A model generated the notes under the pieces. It was given only the letters and a program-made list of their open reading frames with translations. It searched no databases and had not been told where the DNA came from. From assembly GCA_002269645.1 (NCBI GenBank), contig NIVC01002631.1:1-64000 (forward strand): DNA of 64,000 nucleotides, given 5' to 3'. This stretch comes from Macrostomum lignano (lineage: Eukaryota). This document shows, in pieces, positions 40,430 through 64,000 of the stretch (position 1 is its first letter; the number at the start of each line of letters is the position of its first letter). Both the position numbers and the translations under genes were made by a program.

Positions 40430-40932
40430 TCATTGGATGCAGCGACTGACTGGTCATTGGATGCTGGGACTGACTGGTCATTGGATACTGTGACTGACTG
40501 GTCATTGGATGCAGCGACTGACTGGTCATTGGATACTGTGACTGACTGGTCATTGGATGCAGCGACTGACTGGTCATTGGATGCAGCGACTGACTGGTCA
40601 TTGGATGCAGCGACTGACTGGTCATTGGATGCTGTGACTGACTGGTCATTGGGTGCTGTGATTGACTGGTCATTGGATACTGTGACTGACTGGTCATTGG
40701 ATACTGTGACTGACTGGTCATTGGATGCAGCGACTGACTGGTCATTGGATGCAGCGACTGACTGGTCATTGGATGCTGTGACTGACTGGTCATTGGGTGC
40801 TGTGATTGACTGGTCATTGGATACTGTGACTGACTGGTCATTGGATACTGTGACTGACTGGTCATTGGGTGCTGTGACTGACTGGTCATTGGATGCTGTG
40901 ACTGACTGGTCATTGGATGAAGTGACTGACTG
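40430..40932. repeat. 21-bp minisatellite GACTGACTGGTCATTGGATGC
   Basis: About 24 copies. Confidence 0.95.
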
Positions 40933-41119
40933 AGTGGTCTGAGTGGTAATTCGATTAGCTTCTGTGTGAATTACTTTAAGAAAATTCAACAAAGATCATT
41001 AATACGAAACGACAACAACTGTTGAACAACTGCGAGCAACTTAAAAAAGCTTGGCACACAGGAAGGACCAAGACCGTAATCCACTTCTGCAAATCACGGA
41101 GCGCCAAGTTGAATATTCG

Positions 41120-41170
41120 CTACACAATGTGCTGCTCAAAGTGCCGTTTCAGACTGCTGCCAGACTGAAT
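41120..41170 (-). pseudogene. ZNF copy Z0: only the last 17 codons remain (IQSGSSLKRHFEQHIV*)
   Basis: Homologous to the terminal finger, stop and 3' flank of the other copies (GAATATTCGCTACACAA). Confidence 0.75.
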
Positions 41171-41713
41171 ATCCGCTGGCTGAGGCCCTGAGAGCTGAGC
41201 AAGTGCCAGTGACAGCAGCTGCATTTCAACAGTTTACGTGCCCCATTAAAGTCAATAGAGAAATAACTAACATATCAAGACAAATATTCAAACAAACCAG
41301 TTAGTAAAACAAACCACAAATAAAGTTTGCAGTAACACCGGTTTAATTTATAAATACAGAAAAAAATAAGTTTTGAGATTAAATTTCAGCTACGCATTTA
41401 CCTCCAGACACGGGGAAACTTAAATACATGCTGTGACCAAATTCCATCATGAAAGCAATACTAACGCTTGATTACACAGAAACTGGTCGAAACCTTTGGC
41501 AACAACAAGAAGTGAAAAACATTTAGCAGAGTGCACTACAGTGGCTGCCTGAGTGCATTGGGTGCTGGATGAATTACTCTAGGAAAATTTAATAAAGATT
41601 ATTAATATACAACGACAAAAAAGCTGATAAATGATTGCAAACGCTTGGTGCACAGTAAGGACCAAGACCGGTGGTTCACTTCAGCAATCACGGAGAGCGA
41701 AGTTTAAAATTCG

Positions 41714-42157
41714 CTACACAAGGGACTGCTTGGAGTGCTCTTTTAGACTGCTGCCTTGATTGAGTCTCTTGCCGCCCGACATGCATTCAAACGGCTTTTC
41801 TCCTGTGTGCAGCCTTAAGTACGTAGTGAGGTTGCAGCTGACACTGAATATCTTGTTGCACACCTTGCACTGAAACGGCCTCTCACCAGTGTGAGACTGG
41901 ATGTGCCCGTGAAAATGAGTTGCATCTGAGAAGGACTTCCCACACCGCTTGCACCTGTACAGTTTCGCCTTCTCGTGCACTGCACTAATGTGAGCATTGA
42001 GGTGGCTTTTTCTCGAGAATTTCTTTTGGCAAGTGTCGCACTGGATCGGCCTCTGGACACCCTGAGCTCGACAGTGCCGTGTTGCAGCACACTTTGTAGC
42101 TCGGGTCTTCCCGACTGACTCGCACTCGTGACGCTTCGTTACTGCACAACTGCCGTC
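41714..42157 (-). pseudogene. ZNF copy Z1: 5'-truncated, 4 fingers, 2 of them degenerate
   Basis: Homology to Z2/Z3 stops at about 42157, where Gypsy gag sequence begins. Finger 3 has H>Y and finger 4 reads CMSGG. Confidence 0.75.
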
Positions 42158-43690
42158 CTGGAGTCGGATTTTGAGAGCCAACTGCGAGCACAAGCCGACA
42201 GTTTTTAATTTGGAGACTTTCTGAAAGAAGGTCGGTTCGTAGCCGGACGGTGCAATGCGTCGGTGGTGCAAGAATTGATTATTGACTACTAAAGACTCAT
42301 TGACATCTAAGCTGGAGTTGGAGACTGCTACGGCGCAAGAGCAAGTCAGTACGTGTGCCTTGACTTCAAATAGACAGGTGGAAGTAGTAAATTTAATGAT
42401 ATGCAGACTGCGACATCAAAGCAGTGCTCAAAGCCAGGGACGCATTTCGGGAAAGGCTACAGTTTCTGTAGGATGAAGCATTCGACAAACTCATCCTCGG
42501 CACACGTAACCAAGTGTCAAACTGTGGGAGAATGAGCTATTTTGAAGCCGCATGCAGGCTTTAAAGACCATTCGTCTCGTGTGGAAGAGCAAAATTCACT
42601 TCAAACAAAACCAAGAATTCACTGGGTTGACCTTAAACTGAACGGTAAAGACGTTGCAACGATGGTGGATTCTGGAACATCCGTGACTTGCATTCCCAAG
42701 AGCCTGGCTCAACAGCTGGGACTACTCTGGAGAGATAAAAATGGTCAATTAATTCTTATGGGGGACAATATCTGCGAATGTTAGATTGCATAATGTTCAA
42801 TTGGATGAAAGTGATTGCTTACTACCTGTGCTACTCATGGACTTAAAAGCAAAGCCAGTCCGATCGAAATAGTTCAAGGTTAAGAAGTCGAAGTTAGCAA
42901 ACGCTGTTGTCAAGCTTCAGTGGTCTTTAAGCGAATCCAATTGGAGAGACCAGCAGTGTCGAGAGTCCGACCATTCCCGTTTTCGCTTTTACCAGCCGTT
43001 AAGGAAAGGTTAAAGGATTTGGAAAGGTGACAAATTATTGAAAAAGTACAATGCAACGACCTGTGTTTGCTAACACTATTGTGCTAGTTCTGAAAAGTTC
43101 GAGAGTTCTTAGATCATGCTCCGGCTGGTGTTCATCCTTCAAGTGGCCATAAGACTGCGCTATCCTTTATGATTTGACGAAGGACGTTGTCTGGACTAGG
43201 ACGCCAGAACACCAGAGTGCAGTGAAGAAACTGAAGCAGGACATCATATCGAGACACTTGCTGACTCCGTATGATCCAACTGAAGAGCTGTTCCTGACCA
43301 CTGATGAGTCATCCTAACGGCATTGGAGGAGAGTTGAAACAAAAGTGCCACTCGGAGAGAAGCAGATCGAAGATAGTTTCAGTAGATTGTGATCATGCAA
43401 AGATATGCCAGAGTCGTATCGACAACTTCAGAGTAGACTGAGCTACACTGAGAAACTCCTGCTACTGGATCACCGGATAGTCTTTCCTGCTAAGCTGCAA
43501 GCATTGGTCACAAACCGGAGAACATTCGTGGGTCTGATGATGCTTCGTGACCATATCAGACAGAGCACAGCGAGCGACGGACAATCATCTCGAAGACAAC
43601 GATCAGCAAACCAAACTCTTTAGAGCGACAGCAGTGAGCACAGATATCCAGTGCGGACAACAGGACTGGTATTGATTGCTTTGTACCGGT
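42158..43690 (+). mobile_element. Decayed Ty3/Gypsy LTR-retrotransposon internal region (gag, protease, RT, RNase H and integrase fragments)
   Basis: LRAQAD..FGDFL.E..RFVAG (gag), DLKLNGKDVATMVDSGTSVTCIP (aspartic protease), RPFPFSLLPAVKERLKDLE..IIEKV (RT), LLTPYDPTEELFLTTD (RNase H), LLLDHRIVFP (integrase). Many stops and shifts. Confidence 0.8.
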
Positions 43691-44317
43691 TTTGAATACA
43701 TCCAAGGGTAGGAAGCTACCCTGCAGACAGTAGGAGTGCGGTATGGACACTTGAAGATGAACTCCCTAAAAAACTACTGCAGCTGAAACATTCAACCAAC
43801 TTGCTCAACTGACTGCATATTCGCTGACAGGCCCTGTAAGCTGAGCAAATGCCTGTTGTGACAACTGCTACGTTCAACAGTTTACGTGGCCGATTAAAGT
43901 CAATATGAAAGCAAAAAAACAAACATCAGACAAATATTTAGACAAACTAAAAAAACAAAAACAAGTAAAGTTGACAACGCCACCGGTGAAATTTAAATTG
44001 CAGGGAAAAAACAAGTTTTGGGATAAAATGTAAGCCATGCAGTTACCTGCTTGCAGCTGCACTTCAGACTGTGAACTGCGAACTGTGAAACGACCAAATT
44101 TCATCGTGCAAAAAACGCTTCATTTACACGAAAGTTAAACAGAAGTTTAAAAACGTCAAATAACGCAGGAAGATAGGGCTGAGTACTTCTACAGGGGTAA
44201 TGAGATGGCTAGGAAACAACAACAAAAGTACAGTGCAGTATAGTATATGCCACGACTATGAGTGCTGTCACTAACTGGCCGTTGGATTAGCTTCCAAATG
44301 CATTACTCTAGGAGAAT

Positions 44318-45751
44318 TTAACGAAGAGAATTATTTAAAAAGAAAAACAGCGACACAGTAAGAACAGAGTCACTGTTCACATGAGCAATGACGGAGCGTG
44401 GCAAAGTTGAATATTCGCTACACCATGTGCTGCTGGTAAGATTGTTGACTTGACTGAATTTCATGTCGCAAACTTTGCACTCAAATGGCTTTTCTCCTGT
44501 ATGCAGCCTGGAGTGTTTAGTGAGGCTGCTATTGACAGCAAATCTTTTGCCACAAACTTTGCACTGAAATGGTTTTTCTCCGGTGTGCACCCCTGAGTGT
44601 GCAATCAGGTTGCCGTTGACACTGAATCTTTTGCCGCACACTTTGCACTTAAATGGCCTTTCTCCGGTGTGCACCCTTGAGTGTGCAATGAGGCTGCAAC
44701 CGACACTGATTCTCTTGCAACACACTTTGCACTCAAATAGCTTTTCTCCTGTGTGAAGCCTTGAGTGTTTAGTGAGGCTGTAGTTGACAATGAATCTCTT
44801 GCCGCACACCTTGCATTCAAATGGCTTTTCTCCCATGTGAAGCCTTGAGTGCCTACTGAGGCTGCTGCTGTCGCTGAATCTTGTGCCGCACACCTTGCAC
44901 TCAAATGGCTTTTCTCCTGAGTGCAACCTTAAGTGCTTAGTGAGGTTGCTGCTGTCGCTGAATCTCTTGCCGCACACCTTGCACTCAAATGGCTTTTCTC
45001 CTGAGTGCAACCTTAAGTGCTTAGTGAGGTTGCTGCTGTCGCTGAATCTCTTGCCGCACACTTTGCACTCAAACGGCCTTTCTCCCGTGTGCACCCTGGA
45101 GTGCCTTCTCAAGCTGCTGCTTTGATTGAATCTCTTGCCGCACACCTTGCACTCAAACGGTCTCTCACCAGTGTGAGACCGCATATGCACGTGAAGATGA
45201 GATGACGTTGAGAAAAAATTCCCACACAGCTTGCACTTGTGCGGTTTCGCCTTCATGTGCACTGCACTAATGTGAGCTTCGAGGTGGTCTTTTCTGGAGA
45301 ACTTCTTCTGGCAAGTGTCGCACTGGATCGGCCTCTGGACACCCTGAGCTCGACAGTGCCGTGTTGCAGCACTCTTTGTAGCTCGGGTCTTCCCGACTGA
45401 CTCGCACTCCTGACGCTTCGGCACTGCACGACTGCCGTCTGCACACGGCTGCATCGCTGACTCATTGCGAGATGCGACCTGCTCGACTGCCGCCGCTCTG
45501 CCAGCTTCTGAGTTGGTCGCAGCCGCCTCCTCTGGCTCCGAGTCGCAGCCCATTCCGTGTGACCGCACATGACGCAAGTACTGCGCCACTGCCGCTCGGG
45601 TGCGGCAGAACCGCAGAAGGGGCAGGCGACAGAGCCCCGGCGCATCTCTGAGAAACTGTGGGGCTGCGATCCGTGCTGAGATGCCGATGCTCGAATCCCG
45701 TCTCTGCCTGAGCTGCAATGCGGAGCGGTGGACTTCATTACTTGTGATCAT
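44318..45751 (-). CDS. C2H2 zinc-finger gene copy Z2 (10 complete tandem fingers), with 5' and 3' indels relative to paralogs. Possibly a pseudogene.
   Basis: CxxC-HxxxH fingers with TGEKPF linkers. A 7-nt deletion near 45620 shifts the shared MKSTAPH start (45738) out of frame. A deletion near 44432 destroys the last finger and causes read-through. Confidence 0.7.
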   Translation of the reverse strand: MITSNEVHRSALQLRQRRDSSIGISARIAAPQFLRDAPGLCRLPLLRFCRTRAAVAQYLRHVRSHGMGCDSEPEEAAATNSEAGRAAAVEQVASRNESAMQPCADGSRAVPKRQECESVGKTRATKSAATRHCRAQGVQRPIQCDTCQKKFSRKDHLEAHISAVHMKAKPHKCKLCGNFFSTSSHLHVHMRSHTGERPFECKVCGKRFNQSSSLRRHSRVHTGERPFECKVCGKRFSDSSNLTKHLRLHSGEKPFECKVCGKRFSDSSNLTKHLRLHSGEKPFECKVCGTRFSDSSSLSRHSRLHMGEKPFECKVCGKRFIVNYSLTKHSRLHTGEKLFECKVCCKRISVGCSLIAHSRVHTGERPFKCKVCGKRFSVNGNLIAHSGVHTGEKPFQCKVCGKRFAVNSSLTKHSRLHTGEKPFECKVCDMKFSQVNNLTSSTWCSEYSTLPRSVIAHVNSDSVLTVSLFFFLNNSLR

Positions 45752-45839
45752 CTGGGTTTGAAAGTCATCTAAAAGAATTGAACAATATTTTCTGAATTTG
45801 AAAAGCTTCAGAGGATAGCTGAGTCATACTGACAAATAA

Positions 45840-47470
45840 TGCGACCAATTTTACTCATTTTATGAACGTGATGGAAATATTGATGAATATCGAAGCTGCC
45901 ATATTGATGAAGATGAAAAATATGAATCTGCCGGTTTTAAGCCGTCTTTAAATGATTAGGTGTGAAGGAAGAGAAGGCTGACGAACTCTCACCCAATACC
46001 CACTTGTTTTAGGGGTCTCATTGGAGAAGCCGCGTATGACAAATTAAATTACGGAACATGGTCGCTGCGGCGAAGCCGGAAGACAAGACACTCGAGAAAC
46101 TCAAGGATGAAAGTAAAAGCTTGTCACCTCGCAACAAAACTTATTCTGAGGGAAAGCTACTAATACAAGTACTGCGTTCTAAAGCAAGACACATCTGGAC
46201 GGCAAATTTTGAGCTCCGTGAGTTCGGTTTGTAGCCGGTCTGCGCAATGCGTCGTGTTAAAAGAATTGAAGAAAAAGATTAAAGACCCATTGACATTTGA
46301 CCTGACGGTGAGACTGCTGCCACGCAAGATCACGTCAGTAAGAGTGCCTTGCCCTCAAATGGAAAGGTGAAAGCAGTGAATACGAGTACAACAAAGGGCA
46401 GAGTACGACATCAAAGCAGTGTTCAAAGCCAGGGGTGCATTTCGGGCCTGCCTAGTGCTCAGGCGAGACCAAATTTCTATGTACATCCACCTTTCGTAGA
46501 GTACGTACAAATCATGCACTTCGGTATAGCCAACTTGAACGAGAAGCTCATGAGTGCTGTGGTGCTTAAAAATAACGCATGGATCAAAACCGAAGTTTAA
46601 ACATCAAATAAAGCAAGTGTCAGACGGAGTAAAGCAGATCCAAGACGTTTTCAGTCCATTGCGATCATGTGAAGATGTACCAGAGTCGTATCGACGACTG
46701 CAGAGGAGACTGCGCTGCACTGAGAATTCACTGCTACTGGATCATCGGATAGTTATTCCTGGGGAAGCTGCGAGCACTGGTGATGTGGTTTCTACACGAC
46801 CCTCATTCATGATTTCAAGTAATAAAGGCATGGGCGTGGCATTATATTTGCTGGCTGAATATCGAAGCCGAGATAGATAAATGCGTGGCGGAGAGTTTTT
46901 CATATTTTAAAGCATGAGACCTCAGAAATACGAGTAGATGCTTAGAACAACGGCCAATAACAGAGATCATGGTGCCAGGTGCCTGCTGATCTTGGCCAAT
47001 TAGAGGCAAACAACTTCTAGTGATTTCAAATGCTCGAACAGATTTATTTGCACCGAATAAATCCGTGACATCAACGCAGCGGCTGCTGTCAGAGTACTTT
47101 AGAGAAAGTTGTGCAATCTGATCATCCCGGAAGTACTTGTCAGTGACAATGGACCTCAGTTGGTTGCTAAAGAGATAGCAGGTTGGTTGAACTGTTTCTT
47201 AGGCCACAGTCCGATCAGGATCCAAGATATCATCAGTAGAGTGGAGAGGAGCCTTACAAGAAGCTGTGACTGAACAGCCACGGCGAGTCCAAGATCACCA
47301 AGGTCGAGATCTGATGATGCGTAGAGGCCACATCAGAGACAGCTCAGCGAGCGACGGACAACCATCTCGAAGACGAGCAAACAAGCCATTAAGAGCGAAA
47401 GTACTGAGCGCAAATACCCAGTGCGGACAACAGGAAAGGTATTGATTGCTTTGTCCTGGCTTCGAATACA
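45840..47470 (+). mobile_element. Second decayed Ty3/Gypsy remnant (gag and integrase), homologous to 42158-43690
   Basis: LIGEAAYDKL...AAAKPEDKTLEKL (gag), KDPLTFDL..ETAA, LLLDHRIVIP, PEVLVSDNGPQLVAKEI (integrase core). Shares blocks with the first remnant, e.g. GACAA.CATCTCGAAGAC and CCAGTGCGGACAACAGGA. Confidence 0.8.
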
Positions 47471-47565
47471 CCCACAGGCAGGTAGCGACAGAGCAGCCAG
47501 TGAAAGCGAAGAAGATACACATGAAGATGAACTCCATAAAAAAACTATTGCAGCTGATACACTTA

Positions 47566-47854
47566 TTGTATATGCGCTAAAGTAACTGTAGCGTATGCGA
47601 CGCACGTTAGTTTTCATCAATTCATTTGTGTTATGCATTCGGGTGTTCATGTCTATGTGCTTAACTTGAGTGCTCCTAATAAGCCGTGACTAAAAGGGAA
47701 AGAAAGAACAAGTCGCGGCTGCAGGATAAAATATAAGTACGCTGGTAACTCGCTTCAATTAAACATCACGGACTTCCACTTTGATGTCGTCGATCTAGAT
47801 GAGTCTATCGAGACTGGATTTATAGTCATAGAAGAAGCAGAAGACATATCATCA
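47566..47854. mobile_element. About 290-bp insertion, solo-LTR-like (TG...CA)
   Basis: Splits the paralogous GCTGAAACACTTAACCAAC motif. Flanks are CTTA/TTTA. Contains TATAA and AATTAAA. Confidence 0.45.
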
Positions 47855-48688
47855 TTTAACCAACTGGATCAACTGAAGCTGAGTATTTACTGACCGAGGC
47901 CCTGAGAGCTGAGCAACTGCCTATGACAACAGCTGTATTCAACAGTTTGCGTGGCCTATTAAAGTCAATATCAAAACAATCAACACATCAAGACAAACAT
48001 TTAAACAAACCAATTATTAAAACAATGCAACCGGTGTAATTTTAAATTACAGAAGAAAAAAGTTTAAGAAGAAATTAAAGCCATTCATTTAGCTGCTTGC
48101 AGCTAAACTTCAGTCTGAGGAAACTCAACAAAAGGCTGTGAAAGTTTGGAAACGACCAAATTTCATCATGCATAAAATAATACCACTTCATTATACGAAA
48201 TTTGAATACAAGTGAAAAAGACGTCGAACAACGAGTAGGGAGAATAAGTGCTGAGTACTCCTACAGCAAGTAACGAGATACAGGAGACCTCTGGCAGCAC
48301 CAAATAATGAAAAACTGGTCTAGCAGTAGAGTACACTAAAATTGACGACCCACTGGCAATTGAGTGCTGTCACTAGCTGGTCATTGCATTAGCTGCATTA
48401 GCATTAGCTTTGGAGAATTCAACAAAAAAGATTAATAAAACGAAAAATGCTGTTAAGCGATTGCGAGCCACTTGACGCTTGGCGTACACTAAGAATCAAT
48501 ATCGATTGTCTACATCGGCAATTACGGAGAGCAGCTAAACTGAATATTCGCTACACAATGTGCCTTCACTCGAAGTGCCTTTTCAGATTGTTGATTTGAT
48601 TAAATCTCTTGCCACACACCTTGCACTCAACTGGCCTTTCTTCTGTGTGCAGCCATAGGTGTGCAATGAGGTTTCCGTTGACACTGAA

Positions 48689-50143
48689 TTACTTGCTGTA
48701 TACTTTGCCCTCAAATGGCTTTTCTCCTGTGTGCAACCTTGAGTGCCTAGTGAGGCTGCTTCTGTCACTGAATCTCTTGCCGCATATTTTGCACTCAAAC
48801 GGCTTTTCTCCTGTGTGTAGCCTTGAGTGCGTAGTAACATTACTGCTGATACTGAATCTCTTGCCGCACACTTTGCAATCAAATGGCTTTTTTCCTGTGT
48901 GCAGCCGCGAGTGGGTAGTGAGGTTGCCGTTTTGACTGAATCGCTTGCCGCACACCTTGCACTCAAATGGCTTTTCTCCTGTGTGAAGCCGCGAGTGGGT
49001 AGTCAGGTTGCTGTTTTTACTGAATCGCTTGCCGCACACTTTGCAATCAAATGGCTTTTTTCCTGTGTGCAGCCGCGAGTGGGTAGTGAGGTTGCTGTTT
49101 TTACTGAATCGCTTGCCGCACACTTTGCAATCAAATGGCTTTTTTCCTGTGTGCAGCCGCGAGTGGGTAGTGAGGTTGCCGTTTTGACTGAATCTCTTGC
49201 CGCACACCTTGCACTCAAATGGCTTTTCTCCTGTGTGAAGCCGCGAGTGGGTAGTCAGGTTGCTGTTTTTACTGAATCGCTTGCCGCACACTTTGCATTC
49301 AAATGGCTTTTTTCCTGTGTGCAGCCTGGAGTGTGTAGTGAGGCTGCAACTGACACCAAATCTTTTGCCGCACAGTTTGCACTCAAATGGCTTTTTTCCT
49401 GTGTGCAGCCTGGAGTGTGTAGTGAGGCTGCAACTGACACCAAATCTTTTGCCGCACAGTTTGCACTCAAATGGCTTTTTTCCTGTGTGCAGACTTAACT
49501 GCCTAGTGAGGTGGCTGCTTCGATTTAATCTCTTGCCGCACACCTCGCACTCAAACGGCCTCTCTCCAGTGTGAGAACGGATGTGCACGTGTAGATGAGA
49601 CGCCTTTGTGAAGGACTTCCCACACCATTTGCACTTGTGTGGTTTCTCCTTTATGTGCACTGCACTAATGTGAGCCTTGAGGTGGCCTTTTCTGGAGAAC
49701 TTCTTCTGGCAAGTGTCGCACTGGAACGGCCTCTGGACACCCTGAGCTCGACGGTGCCGTGTTGCAGCACTCTTTGTAGCTCGGGTATTCCCGACTGACT
49801 CGCACTCCTGACGCTTCGTCACTGCACGACTGCCGTCTGCACACGGCTGCATCGCTGACTCATTGCGAGACGCGACCTGCTCGACCGCCGCCGCTCTGAC
49901 AGCTTCTGAGTTGGTCGCAGCCGCCTCCTCTGGCTCCGAGTCGCAGCCCATTCCGTGTGACCGCACATGACGCAAGTACTGCGCCACTGCCGCTCGGGTG
50001 CGGCAGAACCGCCTGGGACAAAAGGGGCAGGCGACAGAGCCCCGGCGCATCTCTGAGAAACTGTGGGGCTGCGATCCGTGCTGAGATGCCGATTCTCGAA
50101 GCCCGTCTCTGCCTGAGCTGCAATGCGGAGCGGTAGACTTCAT
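48689..50143 (-). CDS. C2H2 zinc-finger protein copy Z3, 484 aa: N-terminal atypical CPFC..H..H finger, leader and 12 tandem fingers (one with H>Q)
   Basis: Intact ORF from ATG 50143. Two further decayed fingers lie beyond the TAA (48551-48690). Confidence 0.85.
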   Translation of the reverse strand: MKSTAPHCSSGRDGLRESASQHGSQPHSFSEMRRGSVACPFCPRRFCRTRAAVAQYLRHVRSHGMGCDSEPEEAAATNSEAVRAAAVEQVASRNESAMQPCADGSRAVTKRQECESVGNTRATKSAATRHRRAQGVQRPFQCDTCQKKFSRKGHLKAHISAVHIKEKPHKCKWCGKSFTKASHLHVHIRSHTGERPFECEVCGKRLNRSSHLTRQLSLHTGKKPFECKLCGKRFGVSCSLTTHSRLHTGKKPFECKLCGKRFGVSCSLTTHSRLHTGKKPFECKVCGKRFSKNSNLTTHSRLHTGEKPFECKVCGKRFSQNGNLTTHSRLHTGKKPFDCKVCGKRFSKNSNLTTHSRLHTGKKPFDCKVCGKRFSKNSNLTTHSRLHTGEKPFECKVCGKRFSQNGNLTTHSRLHTGKKPFDCKVCGKRFSISSNVTTHSRLHTGEKPFECKICGKRFSDRSSLTRHSRLHTGEKPFEGKVYSK

Positions 50144-50280
50144 TACTTTGTAATCAGAGATTTAATGATATTGGAATTCTTAAGGAAAAATAGATTTATC
50201 CCACATTTACCGGTAAAACTAAGACGTACGTAGACACGGGGCAAAGTTCAGATCTGTGTAACGCCATTTGTAACTGGGTG

Positions 50281-50622
50281 TGTCATGGAATCTGTACTGT
50301 TAAATACATGACTTGAAGTTTTGCTTTTTCGCCTCTGACTACATACTCTCTATGACATGAATGATTTCTGGTCTAAACTGAGGTCTGTAAGTCTTTTAAC
50401 GTAAAATTTAAAATGATGAACCATTTCAAATGCACTTTGAAATGAATCATTGGACATGGTATATAAGTCAAAGAGAGGAAACTTGAGATTATGGTGGTTA
50501 GGGTGAGTCATAGAGTAGGTACGGTGAGTCTAACCAGTCAGGGTGGTTAGCGTGGGAGATCAAGAAGAGTAGTGAAAAGAAGCGGGACACCAGTTCGAAA
50601 TCAAGGATTGTCATTTATGACA
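50281..50622. mobile_element. Solo-LTR-like segment (TGTCAT...ATGACA, 342 bp), repeated at 54240, 58199 and 62158
   Basis: Perfect 6-bp inverted termini and an internal TATATAAG. No target-site duplication found (GGGTG versus AGCAA). Confidence 0.4.
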
Positions 50623-55348: not shown

Positions 55349-56414
55349 CGAGGATGCTTAACAAGTTCGCAGAAAATGTAGCTCGTAGCTTCCTTATATG
55401 CAAATAAAATGAGATTTTTTGTGTTTATATCAGTACATATTAAAACTTCATGTCAATTTTCAGCCTCTGCTTAAAATGCTACGACGCAATGGTCGAAAAA
55501 GTGATACGACCCCAGACCCTGTCCTGGGATTGACAATGTGACAGACGAGTTGCAGTTCTTGTTCAATTTCGATTTGGCCAATCCGCCTCTCGAGCGCTTG
55601 CAGATGCTTTGAAAAGCGTTGGGTGATGAAGCATCATCCCAGACAATGGTGTACAAGTGGTTTGAACGAGAAGGCCGTCCAAATTCGGTTATTACGAACG
55701 CAACAGTTCCAGTGTCCAAAGACTGCTCGATGAAGATCGAGGAGTGACGGTTGGCGAAATCGAGAAACATGTCGGGATTTCAGATTCAAGCGCCATTTCT
55801 ATCTTGCATGATCATCTGGGCATGAGGAAAGCGTCTGCACTCTGGGTGCCCCATTACTTGAACTTCACTCTTATTCCGGTGGTGTGGCATCCTGCCGCAC
55901 ATTCTATTCGAAAAAGGTGCCACAGTGACTAGTCACTGGTACTTAAGTGTCTGCCTGTCCCAGGTGCTGGAGCTCCTCTGTCAGGATGCGGCCAAAGACC
56001 AGAGACCATGCCATTTTCTTGCACCATGACAATGCTCCAGCTCACCGAGCCAGAGTGACACAGGAGTTTCTGGCATTGACTCAGCAGACTCTGCTGCCAC
56101 ATCCAGCCTACTCGCCTGAAATCGCTCCAGCTGACTTCTTCCTCTTCAAGAAGATCAAGAAGAATCTCAAGGGAAAGCGTTTTGACTCACGCAAGAAGCT
56201 TAAAGAGGCGTTGAAAGCAGAGCTGGAAGCTATCCCTCAGGTGGAATTAAGGGCATGTTTTGCAGCATAGTTTCATGCGATGGAGAAATGCAGAAATCTG
56301 TCTGAAAACTATGCTGAGAAGTCTCATTAATTGGGGGGGATACATTCAAAACAATTTTCAGGTGGCGGCATATTCAGAAGTGTCTTTTTTCCGCGAACTT
56401 ATTAAGCATCCATT
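55349..56414 (+). mobile_element. Mariner remnant, copy in repeat unit 2
   Basis: Same sequence as 51390-52455 at +3959. Confidence 0.9.
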
Positions 56415-56834
56415 GCAACAACGCTCGGCTTTACAAAACTTAAAGAACAAATGTTAAGAAGTAGAAACGATGCATGAGTGCTGAGTAGTGATACAGACAG
56501 TAATGTTATGAGAAACAACTGGAAACCTTTAGCAGCAACAAGTGAAAAGATGGCCTAACAGTAGAGTGCAGTATTGTATATGCCGTGACTAACTAGTCAT
56601 TGACTGCTGTCACTAACAGGTCATTGGTTTAGCATCCGCCTGTATTGCTCTAGAATAACTCAGCGAAGATCATTAAAGCTCTAAAGACAGAAGGACAAGA
56701 CAAAAAAGCTATGAAACGATGACAAGCAAACACTTGGCGCACAGTATGGACCAAGACCAATTGTCCACATCGGCAATTAGCGGAGTGCAGCAAATTTGAA
56801 TATTCGCTACACAACGTGCTGCTCGGAGTGGCTA

Positions 56835-58061
56835 TTAAGATTGCTGACTTGATTGAATCTCTTGCCGCACACTTTGCACTGAAACGGCTTTTTTCTCAGT
56901 GTGCAGCCTTGAGTGGGTAGTGAGAATGTTGGCTTGATTAAATCTCCTGCCGCACACTTTGCACTGAAACGGCTTTTCTCCTGTATGCAGCCTTGAGTGG
57001 GTTGTGAGAATGTTGACTTGATTAAATCTCCTGCCGCACACTTTGCACTGAAACGGCTTTTCTCCTGTATGCAGCCTTGAGTGGGTTGTGAGGCTGCTAT
57101 TGACAGCAAATCTCTTGCCGCAAACTTTGCATTGAAATGGCTTTTCACCAGTGTGTAGCCTTGAGTGGGTGGTGAGGCTGCTATTGACACTGAATCTCTT
57201 GCCGCACACCTTGCAAACAAATGGCTTTTCTCCGGTGTGCAGCCTTAAGTGCTTAGTGAGACCGCTGCTGTCACTGAATCTCTTGCCGCACACCTTGCAC
57301 TCAAATGGCTTTTCTCCTGTGTGCACCCTTGAGTGCGTAGTAAGGCTGCTGCTGTCACTGAATCTCTTGCCGCACACCTTGCACTGAAATGGCTTTTCTC
57401 CTGTGTGCAACCTTAAGTGCTTAGTGAGGCTGCTGCTGTCACTGAATCTCTTGCCGCACACCTCGCACTCAAACGGCCTCTCTCCAGTGTGAGAACGGAT
57501 GTGCACGTGTAGATGAGACGCCTTTGTGAAGGACTTCCCACACCATTTGCACTTGTGTGGTTTCTCCTTTATGTGCACTGCACTAATGTGAGCCTTGAGG
57601 TGGCCTTTTCTGGAGAACTTCTTCTGGCAAGTGTCGCACTGGAACGGCCTCTGGACACCCTGAGCTCGACGGTGCCGTGTTGCAGCACTCTTTGTAGCTC
57701 GGGTATTCCCGACTGACTCGCACTCCTGACGCTTCGTCACTGCACGACTGCCGTCTGCACACGGCTGCATCGCTGACTCATTGCGAGACGCGACCTGCTC
57801 GACCGCCGCCGCTCTGACAGCTTCTGAGTTGGTCGCAGCCGCCTCCTCTGGCTCCGAGTCGCAGCCCATTCCGTGTGACCGCACATGACGCAAGTACTGC
57901 GCCACTGCCGCTCGGGTGCGGCAGAACCGCCTGGGACAAAAGGGGCAGGCGACAGAGCCCCGGCGCATCTCTGAGAAACTGTGGGGCTGCGATCCGTGCT
58001 GAGATGCCGATTCTCGAAGCCCGTCTCTGCCTGAGCTGCAATGCGGAGCGGTAGACTTCAT
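56835..58061 (-). CDS. C2H2 zinc-finger protein copy Z5 (same protein as Z4)
   Basis: Identical translation. Confidence 0.85.
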   Translation of the reverse strand: MKSTAPHCSSGRDGLRESASQHGSQPHSFSEMRRGSVACPFCPRRFCRTRAAVAQYLRHVRSHGMGCDSEPEEAAATNSEAVRAAAVEQVASRNESAMQPCADGSRAVTKRQECESVGNTRATKSAATRHRRAQGVQRPFQCDTCQKKFSRKGHLKAHISAVHIKEKPHKCKWCGKSFTKASHLHVHIRSHTGERPFECEVCGKRFSDSSSLTKHLRLHTGEKPFQCKVCGKRFSDSSSLTTHSRVHTGEKPFECKVCGKRFSDSSGLTKHLRLHTGEKPFVCKVCGKRFSVNSSLTTHSRLHTGEKPFQCKVCGKRFAVNSSLTTHSRLHTGEKPFQCKVCGRRFNQVNILTTHSRLHTGEKPFQCKVCGRRFNQANILTTHSRLHTEKKAVSVQSVRQEIQSSQQS

Positions 58062-59307
58062 TACTTTGTAATCAGAGATTTAATGATATTGGAATTCTTA
58101 AGGAAAAATAGATTTATCCCACATTTACCGGTAAAACTAAGACGTACGTAGACACGGGGCAAAGTTCAGATCTGTGTAACGCCATTTGTAACTGGGTGTG
58201 TCATGGAATCTGTACTGTTAAATACATGACTTGAAGTTTTGCTTTTTCGCCTCTGACTACATACTCTCTATGACATGAATGATTTCTGGTCTAAATTGAG
58301 GTCTGTAAGTCTTTTAACGTAAAATTTAAAATGATGAACCATTTCAAATGCACTTTGAAATGAATCATTGGACATGGTATATAAGTCAAAGAGAGGAAAC
58401 TTGAGATTATGGTGGTTAGGGTGAGTCATAGAGTAGGTACGGTGAGTCTAACCAGTCAGGGTGGTTAGCGTGGGAGATCAAGAAGAGTAGTGAAAAGAAG
58501 CGGGACACCAGTTCGAAATCAAGGATTGTCATTTATGACAAGCAAATTAATGTTATAAATGCAGACAGAACATTTGTCCACGTGCCGGGATTTTTTTCAA
58601 TGTCTTCAACAGACAGACAGAAGGGGTGCAGTGTGCTCAGAGGCGGTCATGCTCAGCAAGACAACTCAAACGGGCAGAGATTTGGCTTACAACCAGTTAG
58701 CTGTGCTCAGTCTTATACTGCAGGATTGGAATTACACAACTTGAGTAGCTAAATGCCATGCAGACTGTCAGAGGTGAGCTGTCAGCAGCACTAGCAAGTT
58801 GGCAGCCATGAAAATCTGCATTCAAGCGGCAGCACAGCTGAAGCACCGCATGGCTGGCAAAATGCCTTGCGGAGAAGCTCAGTGCGGGAAACACCTCAAT
58901 GCGAGCCTCAGCAGAAAACTGCTGCAGCTGAAACACTTAACCAACTTGATCAGCTGATTGAATATCCGCTGGCTGAGGCCCTGAGAGCTGAGCAAATTCC
59001 CATGGCAACAGCTGCATTGAACACCCTATGTGGTCTATTAAAGTCAATATTAAAAGAATCAACACCTCAAGACAAACATTTAAACTAACGAATTAGTAAA
59101 ATTGAAACAATAAAGTTGTATTTAGTTAAAGCAAACCAGTTAAAGGTTATTAGTAACAATAAAGTGTGCTAGGCAGCCATGCATTTAATTTAATTAATGA
59201 AGAAAATTTATAGCCCCACATCAAGACAAACATTAAAACAAACATGGGGAACTTTAACACTGGCTGTGAAAGTTGTGTATCGAGAAAATTCCATCATGCA
59301 GACAATA

Positions 59308-60373
59308 CGAGGATGCTTAACAAGTTCGCAGAAAATGTAGCTCGTAGCTTCCTTATATGCAAATAAAATGAGATTTTTTGTGTTTATATCAGTACATATT
59401 AAAACTTCATGTCAATTTTCAGCCTCTGCTTAAAATGCTACGACGCAATGGTCGAAAAAGTGATACGACCCCAGACCCTGTCCTGGGATTGACAATGTGA
59501 CAGACGAGTTGCAGTTCTTGTTCAATTTCGATTTGGCCAATCCGCCTCTCGAGCGCTTGCAGATGCTTTGAAAAGCGTTGGGTGATGAAGCATCATCCCA
59601 GACAATGGTGTACAAGTGGTTTGAACGAGAAGGCCGTCCAAATTCGGTTATTACGAACGCAACAGTTCCAGTGTCCAAAGACTGCTCGATGAAGATCGAG
59701 GAGTGACGGTTGGCGAAATCGAGAAACATGTCGGGATTTCAGATTCAAGCGCCATTTCTATCTTGCATGATCATCTGGGCATGAGGAAAGCGTCTGCACT
59801 CTGGGTGCCCCATTACTTGAACTTCACTCTTATTCCGGTGGTGTGGCATCCTGCCGCACATTCTATTCGAAAAAGGTGCCACAGTGACTAGTCACTGGTA
59901 CTTAAGTGTCTGCCTGTCCCAGGTGCTGGAGCTCCTCTGTCAGGATGCGGCCAAAGACCAGAGACCATGCCATTTTCTTGCACCATGACAATGCTCCAGC
60001 TCACCGAGCCAGAGTGACACAGGAGTTTCTGGCATTGACTCAGCAGACTCTGCTGCCACATCCAGCCTACTCGCCTGAAATCGCTCCAGCTGACTTCTTC
60101 CTCTTCAAGAAGATCAAGAAGAATCTCAAGGGAAAGCGTTTTGACTCACGCAAGAAGCTTAAAGAGGCGTTGAAAGCAGAGCTGGAAGCTATCCCTCAGG
60201 TGGAATTAAGGGCATGTTTTGCAGCATAGTTTCATGCGATGGAGAAATGCAGAAATCTGTCTGAAAACTATGCTGAGAAGTCTCATTAATTGGGGGGGAT
60301 ACATTCAAAACAATTTTCAGGTGGCGGCATATTCAGAAGTGTCTTTTTTCCGCGAACTTATTAAGCATCCATT
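59308..60373 (+). mobile_element. Mariner remnant, copy in repeat unit 3
   Basis: Same sequence at +7918. Confidence 0.9.
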
Positions 60374-60793
60374 GCAACAACGCTCGGCTTTACAAAACTT
60401 AAAGAACAAATGTTAAGAAGTAGAAACGATGCATGAGTGCTGAGTAGTGATACAGACAGTAATGTTATGAGAAACAACTGGAAACCTTTAGCAGCAACAA
60501 GTGAAAAGATGGCCTAACAGTAGAGTGCAGTATTGTATATGCCGTGACTAACTAGTCATTGACTGCTGTCACTAACAGGTCATTGGTTTAGCATCCGCCT
60601 GTATTGCTCTAGAATAACTCAGCGAAGATCATTAAAGCTCTAAAGACAGAAGGACAAGACAAAAAAGCTATGAAACGATGACAAGCAAACACTTGGCGCA
60701 CAGTATGGACCAAGACCAATTGTCCACATCGGCAATTAGCGGAGTGCAGCAAATTTGAATATTCGCTACACAACGTGCTGCTCGGAGTGGCTA

Positions 60794-62020
60794 TTAAGAT
60801 TGCTGACTTGATTGAATCTCTTGCCGCACACTTTGCACTGAAACGGCTTTTTTCTCAGTGTGCAGCCTTGAGTGGGTAGTGAGAATGTTGGCTTGATTAA
60901 ATCTCCTGCCGCACACTTTGCACTGAAACGGCTTTTCTCCTGTATGCAGCCTTGAGTGGGTTGTGAGAATGTTGACTTGATTAAATCTCCTGCCGCACAC
61001 TTTGCACTGAAACGGCTTTTCTCCTGTATGCAGCCTTGAGTGGGTTGTGAGGCTGCTATTGACAGCAAATCTCTTGCCGCAAACTTTGCATTGAAATGGC
61101 TTTTCACCAGTGTGTAGCCTTGAGTGGGTGGTGAGGCTGCTATTGACACTGAATCTCTTGCCGCACACCTTGCAAACAAATGGCTTTTCTCCGGTGTGCA
61201 GCCTTAAGTGCTTAGTGAGACCGCTGCTGTCACTGAATCTCTTGCCGCACACCTTGCACTCAAATGGCTTTTCTCCTGTGTGCACCCTTGAGTGCGTAGT
61301 AAGGCTGCTGCTGTCACTGAATCTCTTGCCGCACACCTTGCACTGAAATGGCTTTTCTCCTGTGTGCAACCTTAAGTGCTTAGTGAGGCTGCTGCTGTCA
61401 CTGAATCTCTTGCCGCACACCTCGCACTCAAACGGCCTCTCTCCAGTGTGAGAACGGATGTGCACGTGTAGATGAGACGCCTTTGTGAAGGACTTCCCAC
61501 ACCATTTGCACTTGTGTGGTTTCTCCTTTATGTGCACTGCACTAATGTGAGCCTTGAGGTGGCCTTTTCTGGAGAACTTCTTCTGGCAAGTGTCGCACTG
61601 GAACGGCCTCTGGACACCCTGAGCTCGACGGTGCCGTGTTGCAGCACTCTTTGTAGCTCGGGTATTCCCGACTGACTCGCACTCCTGACGCTTCGTCACT
61701 GCACGACTGCCGTCTGCACACGGCTGCATCGCTGACTCATTGCGAGACGCGACCTGCTCGACCGCCGCCGCTCTGACAGCTTCTGAGTTGGTCGCAGCCG
61801 CCTCCTCTGGCTCCGAGTCGCAGCCCATTCCGTGTGACCGCACATGACGCAAGTACTGCGCCACTGCCGCTCGGGTGCGGCAGAACCGCCTGGGACAAAA
61901 GGGGCAGGCGACAGAGCCCCGGCGCATCTCTGAGAAACTGTGGGGCTGCGATCCGTGCTGAGATGCCGATTCTCGAAGCCCGTCTCTGCCTGAGCTGCAA
62001 TGCGGAGCGGTAGACTTCAT
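60794..62020 (-). CDS. C2H2 zinc-finger protein copy Z6 (same protein as Z4)
   Basis: Identical translation. Confidence 0.85.
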   Translation of the reverse strand: MKSTAPHCSSGRDGLRESASQHGSQPHSFSEMRRGSVACPFCPRRFCRTRAAVAQYLRHVRSHGMGCDSEPEEAAATNSEAVRAAAVEQVASRNESAMQPCADGSRAVTKRQECESVGNTRATKSAATRHRRAQGVQRPFQCDTCQKKFSRKGHLKAHISAVHIKEKPHKCKWCGKSFTKASHLHVHIRSHTGERPFECEVCGKRFSDSSSLTKHLRLHTGEKPFQCKVCGKRFSDSSSLTTHSRVHTGEKPFECKVCGKRFSDSSGLTKHLRLHTGEKPFVCKVCGKRFSVNSSLTTHSRLHTGEKPFQCKVCGKRFAVNSSLTTHSRLHTGEKPFQCKVCGRRFNQVNILTTHSRLHTGEKPFQCKVCGRRFNQANILTTHSRLHTEKKAVSVQSVRQEIQSSQQS

Positions 62021-63266
62021 TACTTTGTAATCAGAGATTTAATGATATTGGAATTCTTAAGGAAAAATAGATTTATCCCACATTTACCGGTAAAACTAAG
62101 ACGTACGTAGACACGGGGCAAAGTTCAGATCTGTGTAACGCCATTTGTAACTGGGTGTGTCATGGAATCTGTACTGTTAAATACATGACTTGAAGTTTTG
62201 CTTTTTCGCCTCTGACTACATACTCTCTATGACATGAATGATTTCTGGTCTAAATTGAGGTCTGTAAGTCTTTTAACGTAAAATTTAAAATGATGAACCA
62301 TTTCAAATGCACTTTGAAATGAATCATTGGACATGGTATATAAGTCAAAGAGAGGAAACTTGAGATTATGGTGGTTAGGGTGAGTCATAGAGTAGGTACG
62401 GTGAGTCTAACCAGTCAGGGTGGTTAGCGTGGGAGATCAAGAAGAGTAGTGAAAAGAAGCGGGACACCAGTTCGAAATCAAGGATTGTCATTTATGACAA
62501 GCAAATTAATGTTATAAATGCAGACAGAACATTTGTCCACGTGCCGGGATTTTTTTCAATGTCTTCAACAGACAGACAGAAGGGGTGCAGTGTGCTCAGA
62601 GGCGGTCATGCTCAGCAAGACAACTCAAACGGGCAGAGATTTGGCTTACAACCAGTTAGCTGTGCTCAGTCTTATACTGCAGGATTGGAATTACACAACT
62701 TGAGTAGCTAAATGCCATGCAGACTGTCAGAGGTGAGCTGTCAGCAGCACTAGCAAGTTGGCAGCCATGAAAATCTGCATTCAAGCGGCAGCACAGCTGA
62801 AGCACCGCATGGCTGGCAAAATGCCTTGCGGAGAAGCTCAGTGCGGGAAACACCTCAATGCGAGCCTCAGCAGAAAACTGCTGCAGCTGAAACACTTAAC
62901 CAACTTGATCAGCTGATTGAATATCCGCTGGCTGAGGCCCTGAGAGCTGAGCAAATTCCCATGGCAACAGCTGCATTGAACACCCTATGTGGTCTATTAA
63001 AGTCAATATTAAAAGAATCAACACCTCAAGACAAACATTTAAACTAACGAATTAGTAAAATTGAAACAATAAAGTTGTATTTAGTTAAAGCAAACCAGTT
63101 AAAGGTTATTAGTAACAATAAAGTGTGCTAGGCAGCCATGCATTTAATTTAATTAATGAAGAAAATTTATAGCCCCACATCAAGACAAACATTAAAACAA
63201 ACATGGGGAACTTTAACACTGGCTGTGAAAGTTGTGTATCGAGAAAATTCCATCATGCAGACAATA

Positions 63267-64000
63267 CGAGGATGCTTAACAAGTTCGCAGAAAATGTAGC
63301 TCGTAGCTTCCTTATATGCAAATAAAATGAGATTTTTTGTGTTTATATCAGTACATATTAAAACTTCATGTCAATTTTCAGCCTCTGCTTAAAATGCTAC
63401 GACGCAATGGTCGAAAAAGTGATACGACCCCAGACCCTGTCCTGGGATTGACAATGTGACAGACGAGTTGCAGTTCTTGTTCAATTTCGATTTGGCCAAT
63501 CCGCCTCTCGAGCGCTTGCAGATGCTTTGAAAAGCGTTGGGTGATGAAGCATCATCCCAGACAATGGTGTACAAGTGGTTTGAACGAGAAGGCCGTCCAA
63601 ATTCGGTTATTACGAACGCAACAGTTCCAGTGTCCAAAGACTGCTCGATGAAGATCGAGGAGTGACGGTTGGCGAAATCGAGAAACATGTCGGGATTTCA
63701 GATTCAAGCGCCATTTCTATCTTGCATGATCATCTGGGCATGAGGAAAGCGTCTGCACTCTGGGTGCCCCATTACTTGAACTTCACTCTTATTCCGGTGG
63801 TGTGGCATCCTGCCGCACATTCTATTCGAAAAAGGTGCCACAGTGACTAGTCACTGGTACTTAAGTGTCTGCCTGTCCCAGGTGCTGGAGCTCCTCTGTC
63901 AGGATGCGGCCAAAGACCAGAGACCATGCCATTTTCTTGCACCATGACAATGCTCCAGCTCACCGAGCCAGAGTGACACAGGAGTTTCTGGCATTGACTC
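63267..64000 (+). mobile_element. Mariner remnant, copy in repeat unit 4, cut by the window edge
   Basis: Same sequence at +11877. Confidence 0.88.

What the first reader, a model, noticed from the sequence alone, without database searches (positions are those of the whole stretch)
40930..64000. Effector-less C2H2 zinc-finger cluster built by repeated tandem amplification together with transposon debris
At least seven homologous units occur, with homologous stops at 41120, 41714, 44418, 48551, 52848, 56807 and 60766. Each has a ZNF on - and a shared 3' flank. The ZNFs have no recognisable KRAB, SCAN, BTB, ZAD or SET domain, only a private leader of about 135 aa with an atypical CPFC..H..H finger, and no intron in the ORF although neighbouring genes are intron-rich. 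Old diverged units and brand-new identical ones coexist, and the spacers are largely Gypsy, LTR-like or mariner sequence. Birth-and-death ZNF clusters in vertebrates act against transposons. This could be an independent invertebrate analogue, or passive amplification.
Basis: partly seen in the sequence, partly recalled or inferred. Interest (0 to 1): 0.75.

Follow-up and report, generated by a model that had tools for sequence, protein, structure and literature searches.

The report
Flatworm zinc-finger gene cluster, tandemly amplified
This is a real, still-growing tandem cluster of a zinc-finger gene family seen only in the flatworm Macrostomum lignano; it is a new example of a familiar kind of gene family, and a role in controlling transposons is possible but untested.

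Summary
The window is contig NIVC01002631.1 (bases 1-64000) of the Macrostomum lignano Mlig_3_7 assembly. The cluster runs from about 40.4 kb to 68.8 kb and has nine units (U1-U9), two of them beyond the window.

U1 and U2 are fragments and U3 carries frameshifts. U4-U9 are annotated genes.

From 49527 to 64256 the sequence repeats every 3959 bp with one mismatch. The left edge of that array lies inside finger 3 of U4, so U4 is a chimera. This points to unequal crossover.

No known effector domain was found in the proteins or on the gene strand of the spacers. The spacers carry decayed LTR-retroelement and mariner-like remnants that were copied along as passengers.

Annotated products begin right after an invariant TTGCAG, the published spliced-leader acceptor motif, 26 nt downstream of that ATG.

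Finger scaffolds are under purifying selection (ω 0.22). Contact residues evolve near neutrality (ω 0.83). The leader is conserved as DNA but barely as protein, and this is unexplained.

The link to transposon defence remains untested. Lineage-specific zinc-finger clusters of this kind are already well known.

The parts
40429..40932 (.). 24-bp minisatellite of 21 copies. It is an expansion of a motif present about twice in the 3' flank of each unit, and it marks the 3' flank of terminal unit U1, the left edge of the cluster.
   Evidence: Tandem repeat. The same motif is at 56581-56626, 48352-48386 and about 44250-44290, and is also expanded at L001 2425-3095.
40967..41162 (-). U1: a remnant holding only the end of the last finger, the stop codon (41120-41122) and the 3' flank.
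   Evidence: The flank 40967-41119 is 75% identical to 41570-41713.
41714..42271 (-). U2: a 5'-truncated pseudogene. It keeps the leader from about residue 103, three fingers and a degenerate last finger. Stop at 41714.
42272..44417 (+). Old spacer with decayed LTR-retroelement remnants: aspartic protease at about 42626-42742 and RNase H at about 43201-43314. It also holds a copy of the conserved 3'-flank element at 43770-44048.
   Evidence: Pfam on six-frame translation, E 9e-7 and 7e-5 (the protease match just reaches its Pfam cut-off, the RNase H match is below it). Collinear with 45752-48550 at 75-81% and with spacers in L001 and L002.
44418..45712 (-). U3: an old unit, not annotated as a gene. 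It has a 7-nt deletion in the leader and a frameshift in the last finger. Predicted acceptor TTGCAG at 45713-45718.
   Evidence: No called gene at this place in L008.
45752..48550 (+). Old spacer with an integrase-core remnant at about 47031-47192 and the conserved 3'-flank element at 47853-48025.
   Evidence: rve, E 8e-3, weak.
48551..50117 (-). U4: a chimeric gene. Its 5' part (leader and fingers 1-3, 49527-50117) belongs to the young repeat. Its 3' part (48551-49526) is old sequence with internal three-finger block duplications. An in-frame stop at 48689 cuts off the last two degenerate fingers. The annotated product is 474 aa (48689-50113).
49527..64000 (.). Young tandem array with period 3959 bp and one mismatch (50378). 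It continues to 64256 in the contig. The next unit, U8, is 99.8% identical and has one extra finger.
52848..54076 (-). U5: an intronless zinc-finger gene with predicted exon start 54076. The annotated 5'-partial product of 399 aa spans 52876-54075. The family's shared stop, retained in U9 (the ancestral stop), is at 52848; the last finger before it is out of frame because of a +1 shift in an A run.
   Evidence: Exact look-up of the predicted product succeeded.
56807..58035 (-). U6: identical to U5.
60766..61994 (-). U7: identical to U5.
54077..54082 (-). Invariant TTGCAG, the predicted spliced-leader trans-splice acceptor. Equivalent sites are at 58036-58041, 61995-62000, 50118-50123 and 45713-45718.
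   Evidence: The motif [T/C]TNCAG and the leader sequence are in PMC8629364. Five annotated paralog products and the window's own U5-U7 products begin right after it.
53620..54110 (-). 5' block (acceptor region, leader and finger 1). It is 93-100% identical among all paralogs, although the finger arrays and spacers are only 75-88% identical.
55352..56411 (+). Mariner/Tc1-like remnant with 25-nt terminal inverted repeats and a DDE_3 fragment at about 56001-56204. It is a passenger found only in the young units. Copies lie at 51393-52452 and 59311-60370, and a fourth starts at 63270.
   Evidence: (E 3e-4, below the Pfam cut-off). It is absent from the matching stretch of the old units.
54975..55142 (-). 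Conserved element of about 170-230 bp, found 350-530 bp downstream of the stop in every unit. In the young units the mariner-like insertion has pushed it further away. Its function is unknown and it may mark the 3' end of the transcript.
   Evidence: Copies lie at 41163-41403, 43770-44048, 47853-48025 and 51016-51183 plus multiples of 3959, and also in L001 and L002.

Best explanation
This is a birth-and-death cluster of a zinc-finger gene family found only in Macrostomum lignano.

Each unit is an intronless cassette. It starts at a spliced-leader acceptor (TTGCAG). It then encodes a weakly constrained N-terminal leader, one atypical finger, and a further 7-11 canonical fingers joined by TGEKP linkers. 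About 0.5 kb of shared 3' flank follows.

Units multiply head to tail by unequal crossover between neighbouring units. Whatever transposon remnants lie in the spacer are copied along. Arrays also change internally by duplication of blocks of fingers. Older units decay into pseudogenes.

Nothing upstream of the acceptor is conserved between units. I infer that each mRNA gets its 5' end by trans-splicing, possibly from a long precursor that spans several units. A new copy could then be expressed without bringing its own promoter.

The products are most likely sequence-specific DNA-binding proteins whose specificity drifts or diversifies quickly. Their targets, and whether they repress anything, are not known.

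Shown: the anatomy, the duplication history, the chimeric junction, the gene annotation, and the selection pattern on the fingers. Inferred: trans-splicing, transcription from a multi-unit precursor, and DNA binding.
For: - Source and annotation: the window equals NIVC01002631.1:1-64000. U4-U9 are called genes whose 5'-partial products start right after the TTGCAG. I predicted that start from paralogs and confirmed it by exact look-up.
- The Mlig_3_7 gene ends were set from spliced-leader and poly(A) reads (PMC5730564). The acceptor motif and the leader sequence are in PMC8629364.
- Homology between units begins about 35-60 nt upstream of the acceptor and not before.
- Unequal crossover: the 3959-bp period starts at 49527 inside finger 3 of U4. 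There is a gradient of identical U5-U7, then 99.8% U8, then old U3/U4 spacers at 75-81%.
- Internal array change: periods of 84 and 252 bp within the arrays.
- Selection: among 108 unique fingers from six loci, scaffold ω is 0.22, contact positions 0.83 and other helix positions about 0.9-1.0.
- Family spread: the leader matches only M. lignano proteins among 1.84 billion representatives. Paralogous clusters sit on five other contigs.
- No effector.
Against: - No RNA reads were inspected here. The trans-splice site rests on where the annotation starts and on a motif.
- Identical copies cannot be told apart by short reads, so perhaps only one of U5-U7 is expressed.
- Units in the window are 2.7 kb apart, beyond the 1-kb rule published for operons.
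- One annotated model (P0011) that joins two units could be a mapping artefact.
- The perfect identity of U5-U7 could be exaggerated by Pilon polishing with multiply mapped reads.
- The leader's strong DNA-level conservation with ω near 1 is not explained by this account.
Confidence: 0.7

Rival explanations
1. An adaptive transposon-repressor system, an independent flatworm counterpart of KRAB or FiNZ zinc-finger proteins. New copies would be kept because their fingers recognise invading elements, and the private leader would recruit silencing factors.
For: - Rapid gain and loss of copies, with variation concentrated in the recognition helix (entropy 2.6-2.7 bits at positions -1 and 6; scaffold ω 0.22).
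- The clusters are interleaved with transposons, including an intact Ty3/Gypsy element in L002.
- LTR retrotransposons make up 21% of this genome (PMC5730564).
- Zinc-finger and retroelement numbers correlate across animals regardless of accessory domain (PMC10547256).
- The second half of the leader has ω about 2 (not significant).
Against: - Pooled ω at the contact residues is 0.83, not above 1.
- The leader has no detectable domain and little protein-level constraint, and a weak model predicts disorder.
- The brand-new copies U5-U7 are identical, so they add dosage, not new specificity.
- Many contact positions are serine, which carries little specificity.
- There are no data on binding, expression stage or knock-down.
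- ZAD zinc-finger proteins show that fast-evolving clusters need not target transposons.
Confidence: 0.18
2. Passive amplification of a decaying family. The units multiply only because tandem repeats in this repeat-rich genome recombine easily. Most copies in this cluster would be functionless or on the way to becoming pseudogenes.
For: - U1 and U2 are fragments and U3 is frameshifted. U4-U8 have lost their last finger or fingers.
- U9 and several paralogs lack parts of the leader.
- Leader ω is about 0.9 and contact-residue ω about 0.8.
- The window is full of other tandem repeats.
Against: - Scaffold residues show clear purifying selection even between closely related fingers (Nd 67.5 of 3591 sites against Sd 82.5 of 945 sites, ω 0.22).
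- Long ORFs with 8-12 intact fingers persist in U4-U9 and in paralogs.
- The genes are in a transcript-based annotation.
Confidence: 0.1
3. The three identical units are partly an assembly product. The true locus would have fewer copies, or copies that differ slightly and were made uniform by consensus building and polishing.
For: The assembly was made with Canu from early PacBio reads and polished with Pilon using short reads. It is known to be redundant (PMC5730564; PMC12801592). There are no differences at all across 3 x 3959 bp.
Against: - The assembler kept a single mismatch at 50378.
- It also kept a unit, U8, that differs by 7 mismatches, one indel and one finger, so small differences are not systematically erased.
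- A 4-kb period is well within the length of a PacBio read.
- A gene model held by UniProt (P0004; I did not check which assembly it comes from) also shows near-identical repeated leaders from another cluster of this family.
Confidence: 0.12

Closest known systems
KRAB zinc-finger protein clusters of tetrapods
   Same: Tandem clusters of poly-C2H2 genes with TGEKP linkers. Copies are gained and lost by unequal crossover and finger arrays change internally. Variation is concentrated in the recognition helix. The genes lie among transposons.
   Different: No KRAB domain or any other known effector. The genes have no introns, whereas KRAB genes are multi-exon. The mRNA 5' end is apparently made by spliced-leader trans-splicing. 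Positive selection on contact residues was not shown (ω 0.83).
FiNZ zinc-finger genes of cyprinid fish (Wells et al. 2023, PMC10547256)
   Same: A lineage-restricted poly-zinc-finger family marked by a private N-terminal sequence with no similarity to known domains. It forms tandem clusters in repeat-rich DNA.
   Different: The leader has no sequence relation to fish proteins; only M. lignano proteins match it. The family is much smaller: 26 leader copies in the six loci sampled, against about 700 genes in zebrafish. For FiNZ genes, positive selection, expression at zygotic genome activation and a transposon effect on knock-down were shown. None of these is known here.
ZAD zinc-finger clusters of insects
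   Same: A lineage-specific clustered poly-zinc-finger family in an invertebrate, with a cysteine-containing N-terminal module.
   Different: No Pfam zf-AD match. The CPFC...H...H motif is a single finger-like module with C-x2-C-x16-H-x3-H spacing, not the four-cysteine ZAD fold.
Spliced-leader trans-spliced genes and operon-like transcriptional units of M. lignano (Wudarski 2017; Ustyantsev 2021)
   Same: An acceptor of the [T/C]TNCAG type sits at the annotated 5' end. Neighbours are on the same strand. In paralogous clusters the units lie less than 1 kb apart.
   Different: The published analysis found trans-spliced genes to be mostly conserved and enriched among stem-cell genes. This is a young species-specific family. 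In the window the units are 2.7 kb apart. Whether they share a precursor RNA was not shown.

Membership tests
Tandem-array C2H2 (Krüppel-type) zinc-finger proteins | Several consecutive C-x2-C-x12-H-x3-H fingers joined by TGEKP-like linkers | tested here: met
   Pfam zf-C2H2 and zf-H2C2_2, E 1e-47 to 6e-88. There are 8-12 fingers per intact unit.
KRAB zinc-finger proteins | N-terminal KRAB domain (Pfam PF01352) | tested here: not met
   No KRAB hit in the ORFs, in the leader alone, or in open gene-strand segments of the spacers.
KRAB zinc-finger proteins | Recruitment of TRIM28/KAP1 and silencing of transposons | not testable with these tools
   Needs binding and knock-down experiments.
KRAB zinc-finger proteins | Positive selection at DNA-contact residues -1, 2, 3 and 6 | tested here: inconclusive
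   ω is 0.83 at contact positions against 0.22 at scaffold positions, counted along a minimum spanning tree of 108 fingers. It is raised but not above 1.
FiNZ zinc-finger proteins | The 28-aa FiNZ N-terminal sequence, restricted to cyprinid fish | tested here: not met
   phmmer with the leader against 1.84 billion representative proteins returned only M. lignano proteins plus weak noise.
ZAD, SCAN, BTB or SET zinc-finger proteins | The respective N-terminal domain | tested here: not met
   No such Pfam family at E up to 0.1 or 1.
Spliced-leader trans-spliced genes of M. lignano | A [T/C]TNCAG acceptor immediately before the mRNA 5' end | tested here: met
   TTGCAG (or CTGCAG) directly precedes the annotated 5'-partial products of U5-U8 and of five paralogs; U4's and U9's start a few to about 30 nt further on. 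Motif from PMC8629364.
Spliced-leader trans-spliced genes of M. lignano | RNA reads that carry the 35-nt leader joined at that site | not testable with these tools
   No read data are available here. The annotation pipeline used such reads (PMC5730564).
Operons of M. lignano | Adjacent same-strand trans-spliced genes less than 1 kb apart after removing repeats | tested here: inconclusive
   Same strand throughout. Spacing is 2.7 kb in the window, of which 1.06 kb is the mariner-like remnant. In L002, L003 and L005 the spacing is about 0.4-0.8 kb.

The most novel reading that the evidence does not exclude
A flatworm has evolved its own transposon-surveillance zinc-finger family. Its genes would be promoter-less cassettes that begin at a spliced-leader acceptor, so any tandem duplicate is expressed at once from a shared precursor RNA. 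The 5' block, conserved as DNA, would act as a shared control or effector module for the whole family.
Probability: 0.1. Interest if true: 0.7.

Novelty: new member of a known kind. Interest (0 to 1): 0.38.

Why it matters
Lineage-specific zinc-finger clusters are common, and their link to transposons has been argued for animals in general. So this cluster mainly adds a flatworm example.

Two points give it some extra value. First, M. lignano supports RNAi and transgenesis, and the 5' block is 93-100% identical across the family. A single double-stranded RNA could therefore silence all copies and test the transposon-control idea outside vertebrates. Second, genes that start at a trans-splice acceptor and share nothing upstream suggest how a family can expand without duplicating promoters.

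Tried and rejected
- Upstream coding exon with an effector: homology between units stops about 35-60 nt before the acceptor. No Pfam domain was found in gene-strand open segments of 50 aa or more in the spacers.
- Known fold in the leader: Pfam gives only a sub-threshold C2H2-like hit. The single-sequence AlphaFold model is poor (pLDDT 49.7), so I ran no fold search.
- Overlapping coding as the reason for the leader's DNA conservation: none of the three frames shows constraint over the whole block.
- Zinc-finger gene carried by a transposon: rejected. The spacers are collinear between units and loci, and the units are strictly head to tail.
- Non-coding RNA in the region: no Rfam match.
- Expression class of the paralogs: their identifiers were not found in papers or in one held supplement, which was cut when stored.
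- Corrected along the way: the first look-up of the 408-aa ORF failed because the annotated product starts at the acceptor, not at the ATG. It succeeded with the predicted start.
- An early BLAST table mixed L001 and L002 because one file held both records. It was redone.
- The shared prefix of Mlig009848g4 and g6 hints at one transcriptional unit. Because prefixes were also given by 95% clustering, I do not rely on it.

Full report
**Source.** The leader of the zinc-finger ORFs matches only Macrostomum lignano proteins. An exon of a neighbouring gene, and then the zinc-finger product itself, placed the window exactly. It is contig NIVC01002631.1, bases 1-64000, of assembly GCA_002269645.1 (Mlig_3_7). 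Window and contig coordinates are the same.

To the left of the cluster lie three + strand features:
- a multi-exon filamin-like gene (26326-38806);
- a kinase exon (9466-9987);
- a NopRA1-like exon (765-1391).

Their introns are full of minisatellites. To the right of the cluster lies an LRR gene on the - strand.

**Check of the observation.** All seven homologous stops, each followed by the conserved RIF..A flank, are at the stated coordinates. Canonical fingers occur only on the - strand inside the cluster. I number the units U1 to U9 from low to high coordinates.

| Unit | Position | State |
|---|---|---|
| U1 | 40967-41162 | Tail fragment only |
| U2 | 41714-42271 | 5'-truncated, three fingers |
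| U3 | 44418-45712 | 7-nt deletion in the leader, frameshift in the last finger; not annotated |
| U4 | 48551-50117 | In-frame stop before two degenerate last fingers |
| U5-U7 | stops at 52848, 56807, 60766 | Identical; +1 shift in an A run puts the last finger out of frame |
| U8, U9 | 64752-66035, 67904-68752 | Beyond the window |

U8 shares the +1 shift although it differs elsewhere, so the shift is older than the amplification. U9 keeps an intact last finger and the stop at the position shared by all units (the ancestral stop).

The 24-bp minisatellite at 40429-40932 is an expansion of a motif present in the 3' flank of every unit.

**How the cluster grew.** From 49527 to 64256 the sequence has a period of 3959 bp with one mismatch, at 50378. 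The left edge, between 49526 and 49527, falls inside finger 3 of U4. U4 is therefore a chimera. Its leader and fingers 1-3 belong to the young repeat, and the rest is old, unique sequence. This is the expected product of unequal crossover between neighbouring units.

U8 is 99.8% identical to the young unit over 3.4 kb and has one extra finger. The spacers of U3 and U4 are collinear in seven blocks at 75-81% identity. They are also collinear with spacers of paralogous clusters on other contigs. So the unit, transposon remnants included, has been copied many times over a long period. Within arrays, periods of 84 and 252 bp show duplication of finger blocks.

**Spacers.** Pfam on six-frame translations gives short matches on the + strand, all but the protease one below the curated cut-offs:
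- aspartic protease (about 42626-42742);
- RNase H (about 43201-43314);
- integrase core (about 47031-47192);
- a DDE_3 transposase fragment (about 56001-56204).

The DDE_3 fragment lies between 25-nt inverted repeats at 55352-55376 and 56387-56411. This 1.06-kb mariner-like remnant is present only in the young units. It sits between the stop and a conserved element of 170-230 bp that otherwise lies 350-530 bp downstream of every unit's stop, here and in the paralogous loci L001 and L002. The transposon pieces are passengers.

**No known effector.** Pfam finds only C2H2 families in the ORFs. It finds nothing in gene-strand open segments of the spacers. In the leader alone it finds only a sub-threshold C2H2-like hit for the CPFC...H...H motif. 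A single-sequence AlphaFold model of residues 1-196 is poor (pLDDT 49.7). Outside one helix, it predicts the leader to be disordered.

**Where the mRNA starts.** An alignment of 5' regions from the window and the paralogous loci L001 and L002 shows three things:
- homology begins only a few tens of bases upstream.

The published M. lignano spliced leader is CGGTCTCTTACTGCGAAGACTCAATTTATTGCATG. The published acceptor motif is [T/C]TNCAG (PMC8629364).

The annotated 5'-partial products of five paralogs begin immediately after such a CAG. From this I predicted that the window's U5 product would start at 54075. Looking up that exact 399-aa sequence returned three annotated genes, U5, U6 and U7, on this contig, with U4, U8 and U9 called beside them.

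The Mlig_3_7 gene ends were set from reads carrying the leader and from poly(A) ends (PMC5730564). The genes are also in a transcript-based annotation, which counts as evidence of expression, although identical copies cannot be told apart.

The leader's own AUG would open an 87-codon frame that is out of phase and ends 10 nt before the ATG of residue 97. In U3 the 7-nt deletion happens to bring that frame into the finger frame. The start codon actually used is unknown.

**Selection on the fingers.** I compared 108 unique fingers from six loci along a minimum spanning tree.

| Positions | Nonsynonymous differences / sites | Synonymous differences / sites | ω |
|---|---|---|---|
| Scaffold | 167 / 5335 | 196 / 1406 | 0.22 |
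| Contact (-1, 2, 3, 6) | 135 / 1074 | 32 / 210 | 0.83 |
| Other helix positions | 88 / 759 | 26 / 204 | about 0.9-1.0 |

The fold has been kept by selection. The specificity residues evolve about four times faster, close to neutrality. This fits either a mix of diversifying and purifying selection or simple relaxation. It does not decide the arms-race question.

**An unexplained feature.** The 5' block, about 490 nt running from just upstream of the acceptor through finger 1, is 93-100% identical in all pairs of units within and between loci. The adjoining fingers and the collinear spacer blocks are only 75-88% identical.

- Synonymous divergence in the leader is 0.01-0.14. For the same pairs it is 0.25-0.42 in fingers 1-2.
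- Variable sites are spread evenly over the three codon positions.
- In the main frame, ω is 0.59 for residues 31-97 and 1.99 for residues 97-138, giving 0.93 overall. No other frame does better.

Purifying selection on a protein does not produce this pattern. A quarter of informative site pairs fail the four-gamete test, and nearby sites are more compatible than distant ones (p about 0.04). This favours gene conversion or repeated crossover confined to the block. Constraint on the RNA or DNA itself remains possible, for example on splice signals, translation control or small-RNA targeting.

**Family.** Paralogous clusters with the same unit anatomy occur on NIVC01000975, NIVC01001847, NIVC01004840, NIVC01001846 and NIVC01002369. 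I counted 26 leader copies in the six loci sampled, including truncated and partly deleted ones; some of the loci may be redundant haplotypes. Intact transposons sit among them. One is a Ty3/Gypsy element with gag and pol in L002, and another is a reverse-transcriptase-bearing element in L001.

**Comparison with what is known.** The cluster behaves like KRAB, FiNZ or ZAD zinc-finger clusters. It fails the membership test for each, because the defining N-terminal domain is absent. Wells et al. 2023 (PMC10547256) showed that zinc-finger and retroelement numbers correlate across animals regardless of accessory domain. They also noted that ZAD genes are an exception. I found no paper describing this family.

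**Verdict.** The finding is a new member of a known kind. Its useful extras are the trans-spliced cassette structure, the chimeric junction that documents unequal crossover, and a family-wide conserved 5' block that is both a puzzle and a handle for knock-down.

Noticed in passing
window 53620-54110 (- strand), with equivalents in all units and in L001-L005: The 5' block of the gene is 93-100% identical among paralogs whose fingers and spacers are 75-88% identical. Synonymous divergence is very low, changes are spread evenly over codon positions, and ω is near 1. There are signs of mosaic exchange between copies.
   Followed up: partly
window 40429-40932; also 56581-56626, 48352-48386 and L001 2425-3095: A motif of about 24 bp in the 3' flank of each unit has expanded independently into minisatellites at two loci.
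   Followed up: partly
window 53812-54076 (- strand): If the spliced leader's terminal AUG is used, it opens an 87-codon out-of-frame reading frame ending 10 nt before the ATG of residue 97. In U3 a 7-nt deletion joins this frame to the finger frame.
   Followed up: partly
window 1-40000: Introns of the filamin-like, kinase and neighbouring genes are packed with long minisatellites with periods of about 8-44 bp, for example at 10090-12199, 13183-14330, 15570-16925 and 28054-28584.
   Followed up: no
L002 2299-7838 (- strand); L001 5695-9480: An intact Ty3/Gypsy element (gag with a CCHC knuckle; pol with RT, RNase H and integrase) and a second element bearing reverse transcriptase lie directly among the paralogous zinc-finger units.
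   Followed up: partly
L003 8216-10838: The annotated gene BOX15_Mlig026502g3 joins the leader of one unit to the body of the next. This is either read-through with cis-splicing or a mapping artefact between near-identical leaders.
   Followed up: partly
window 54975-55142, with copies in every unit and in L001 and L002: A conserved element of 170-230 bp and unknown function lies at a fixed distance downstream of the stop. Its end resembles the sequence just after the stop codon (CGGATATTCA).
   Followed up: partly
contig 64001-71993 (L010): The cluster continues beyond the window with U8 (427 aa, one extra finger) and U9 (282 aa, most of the leader deleted, last finger intact). An LRR gene on the same strand follows.
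   Followed up: yes
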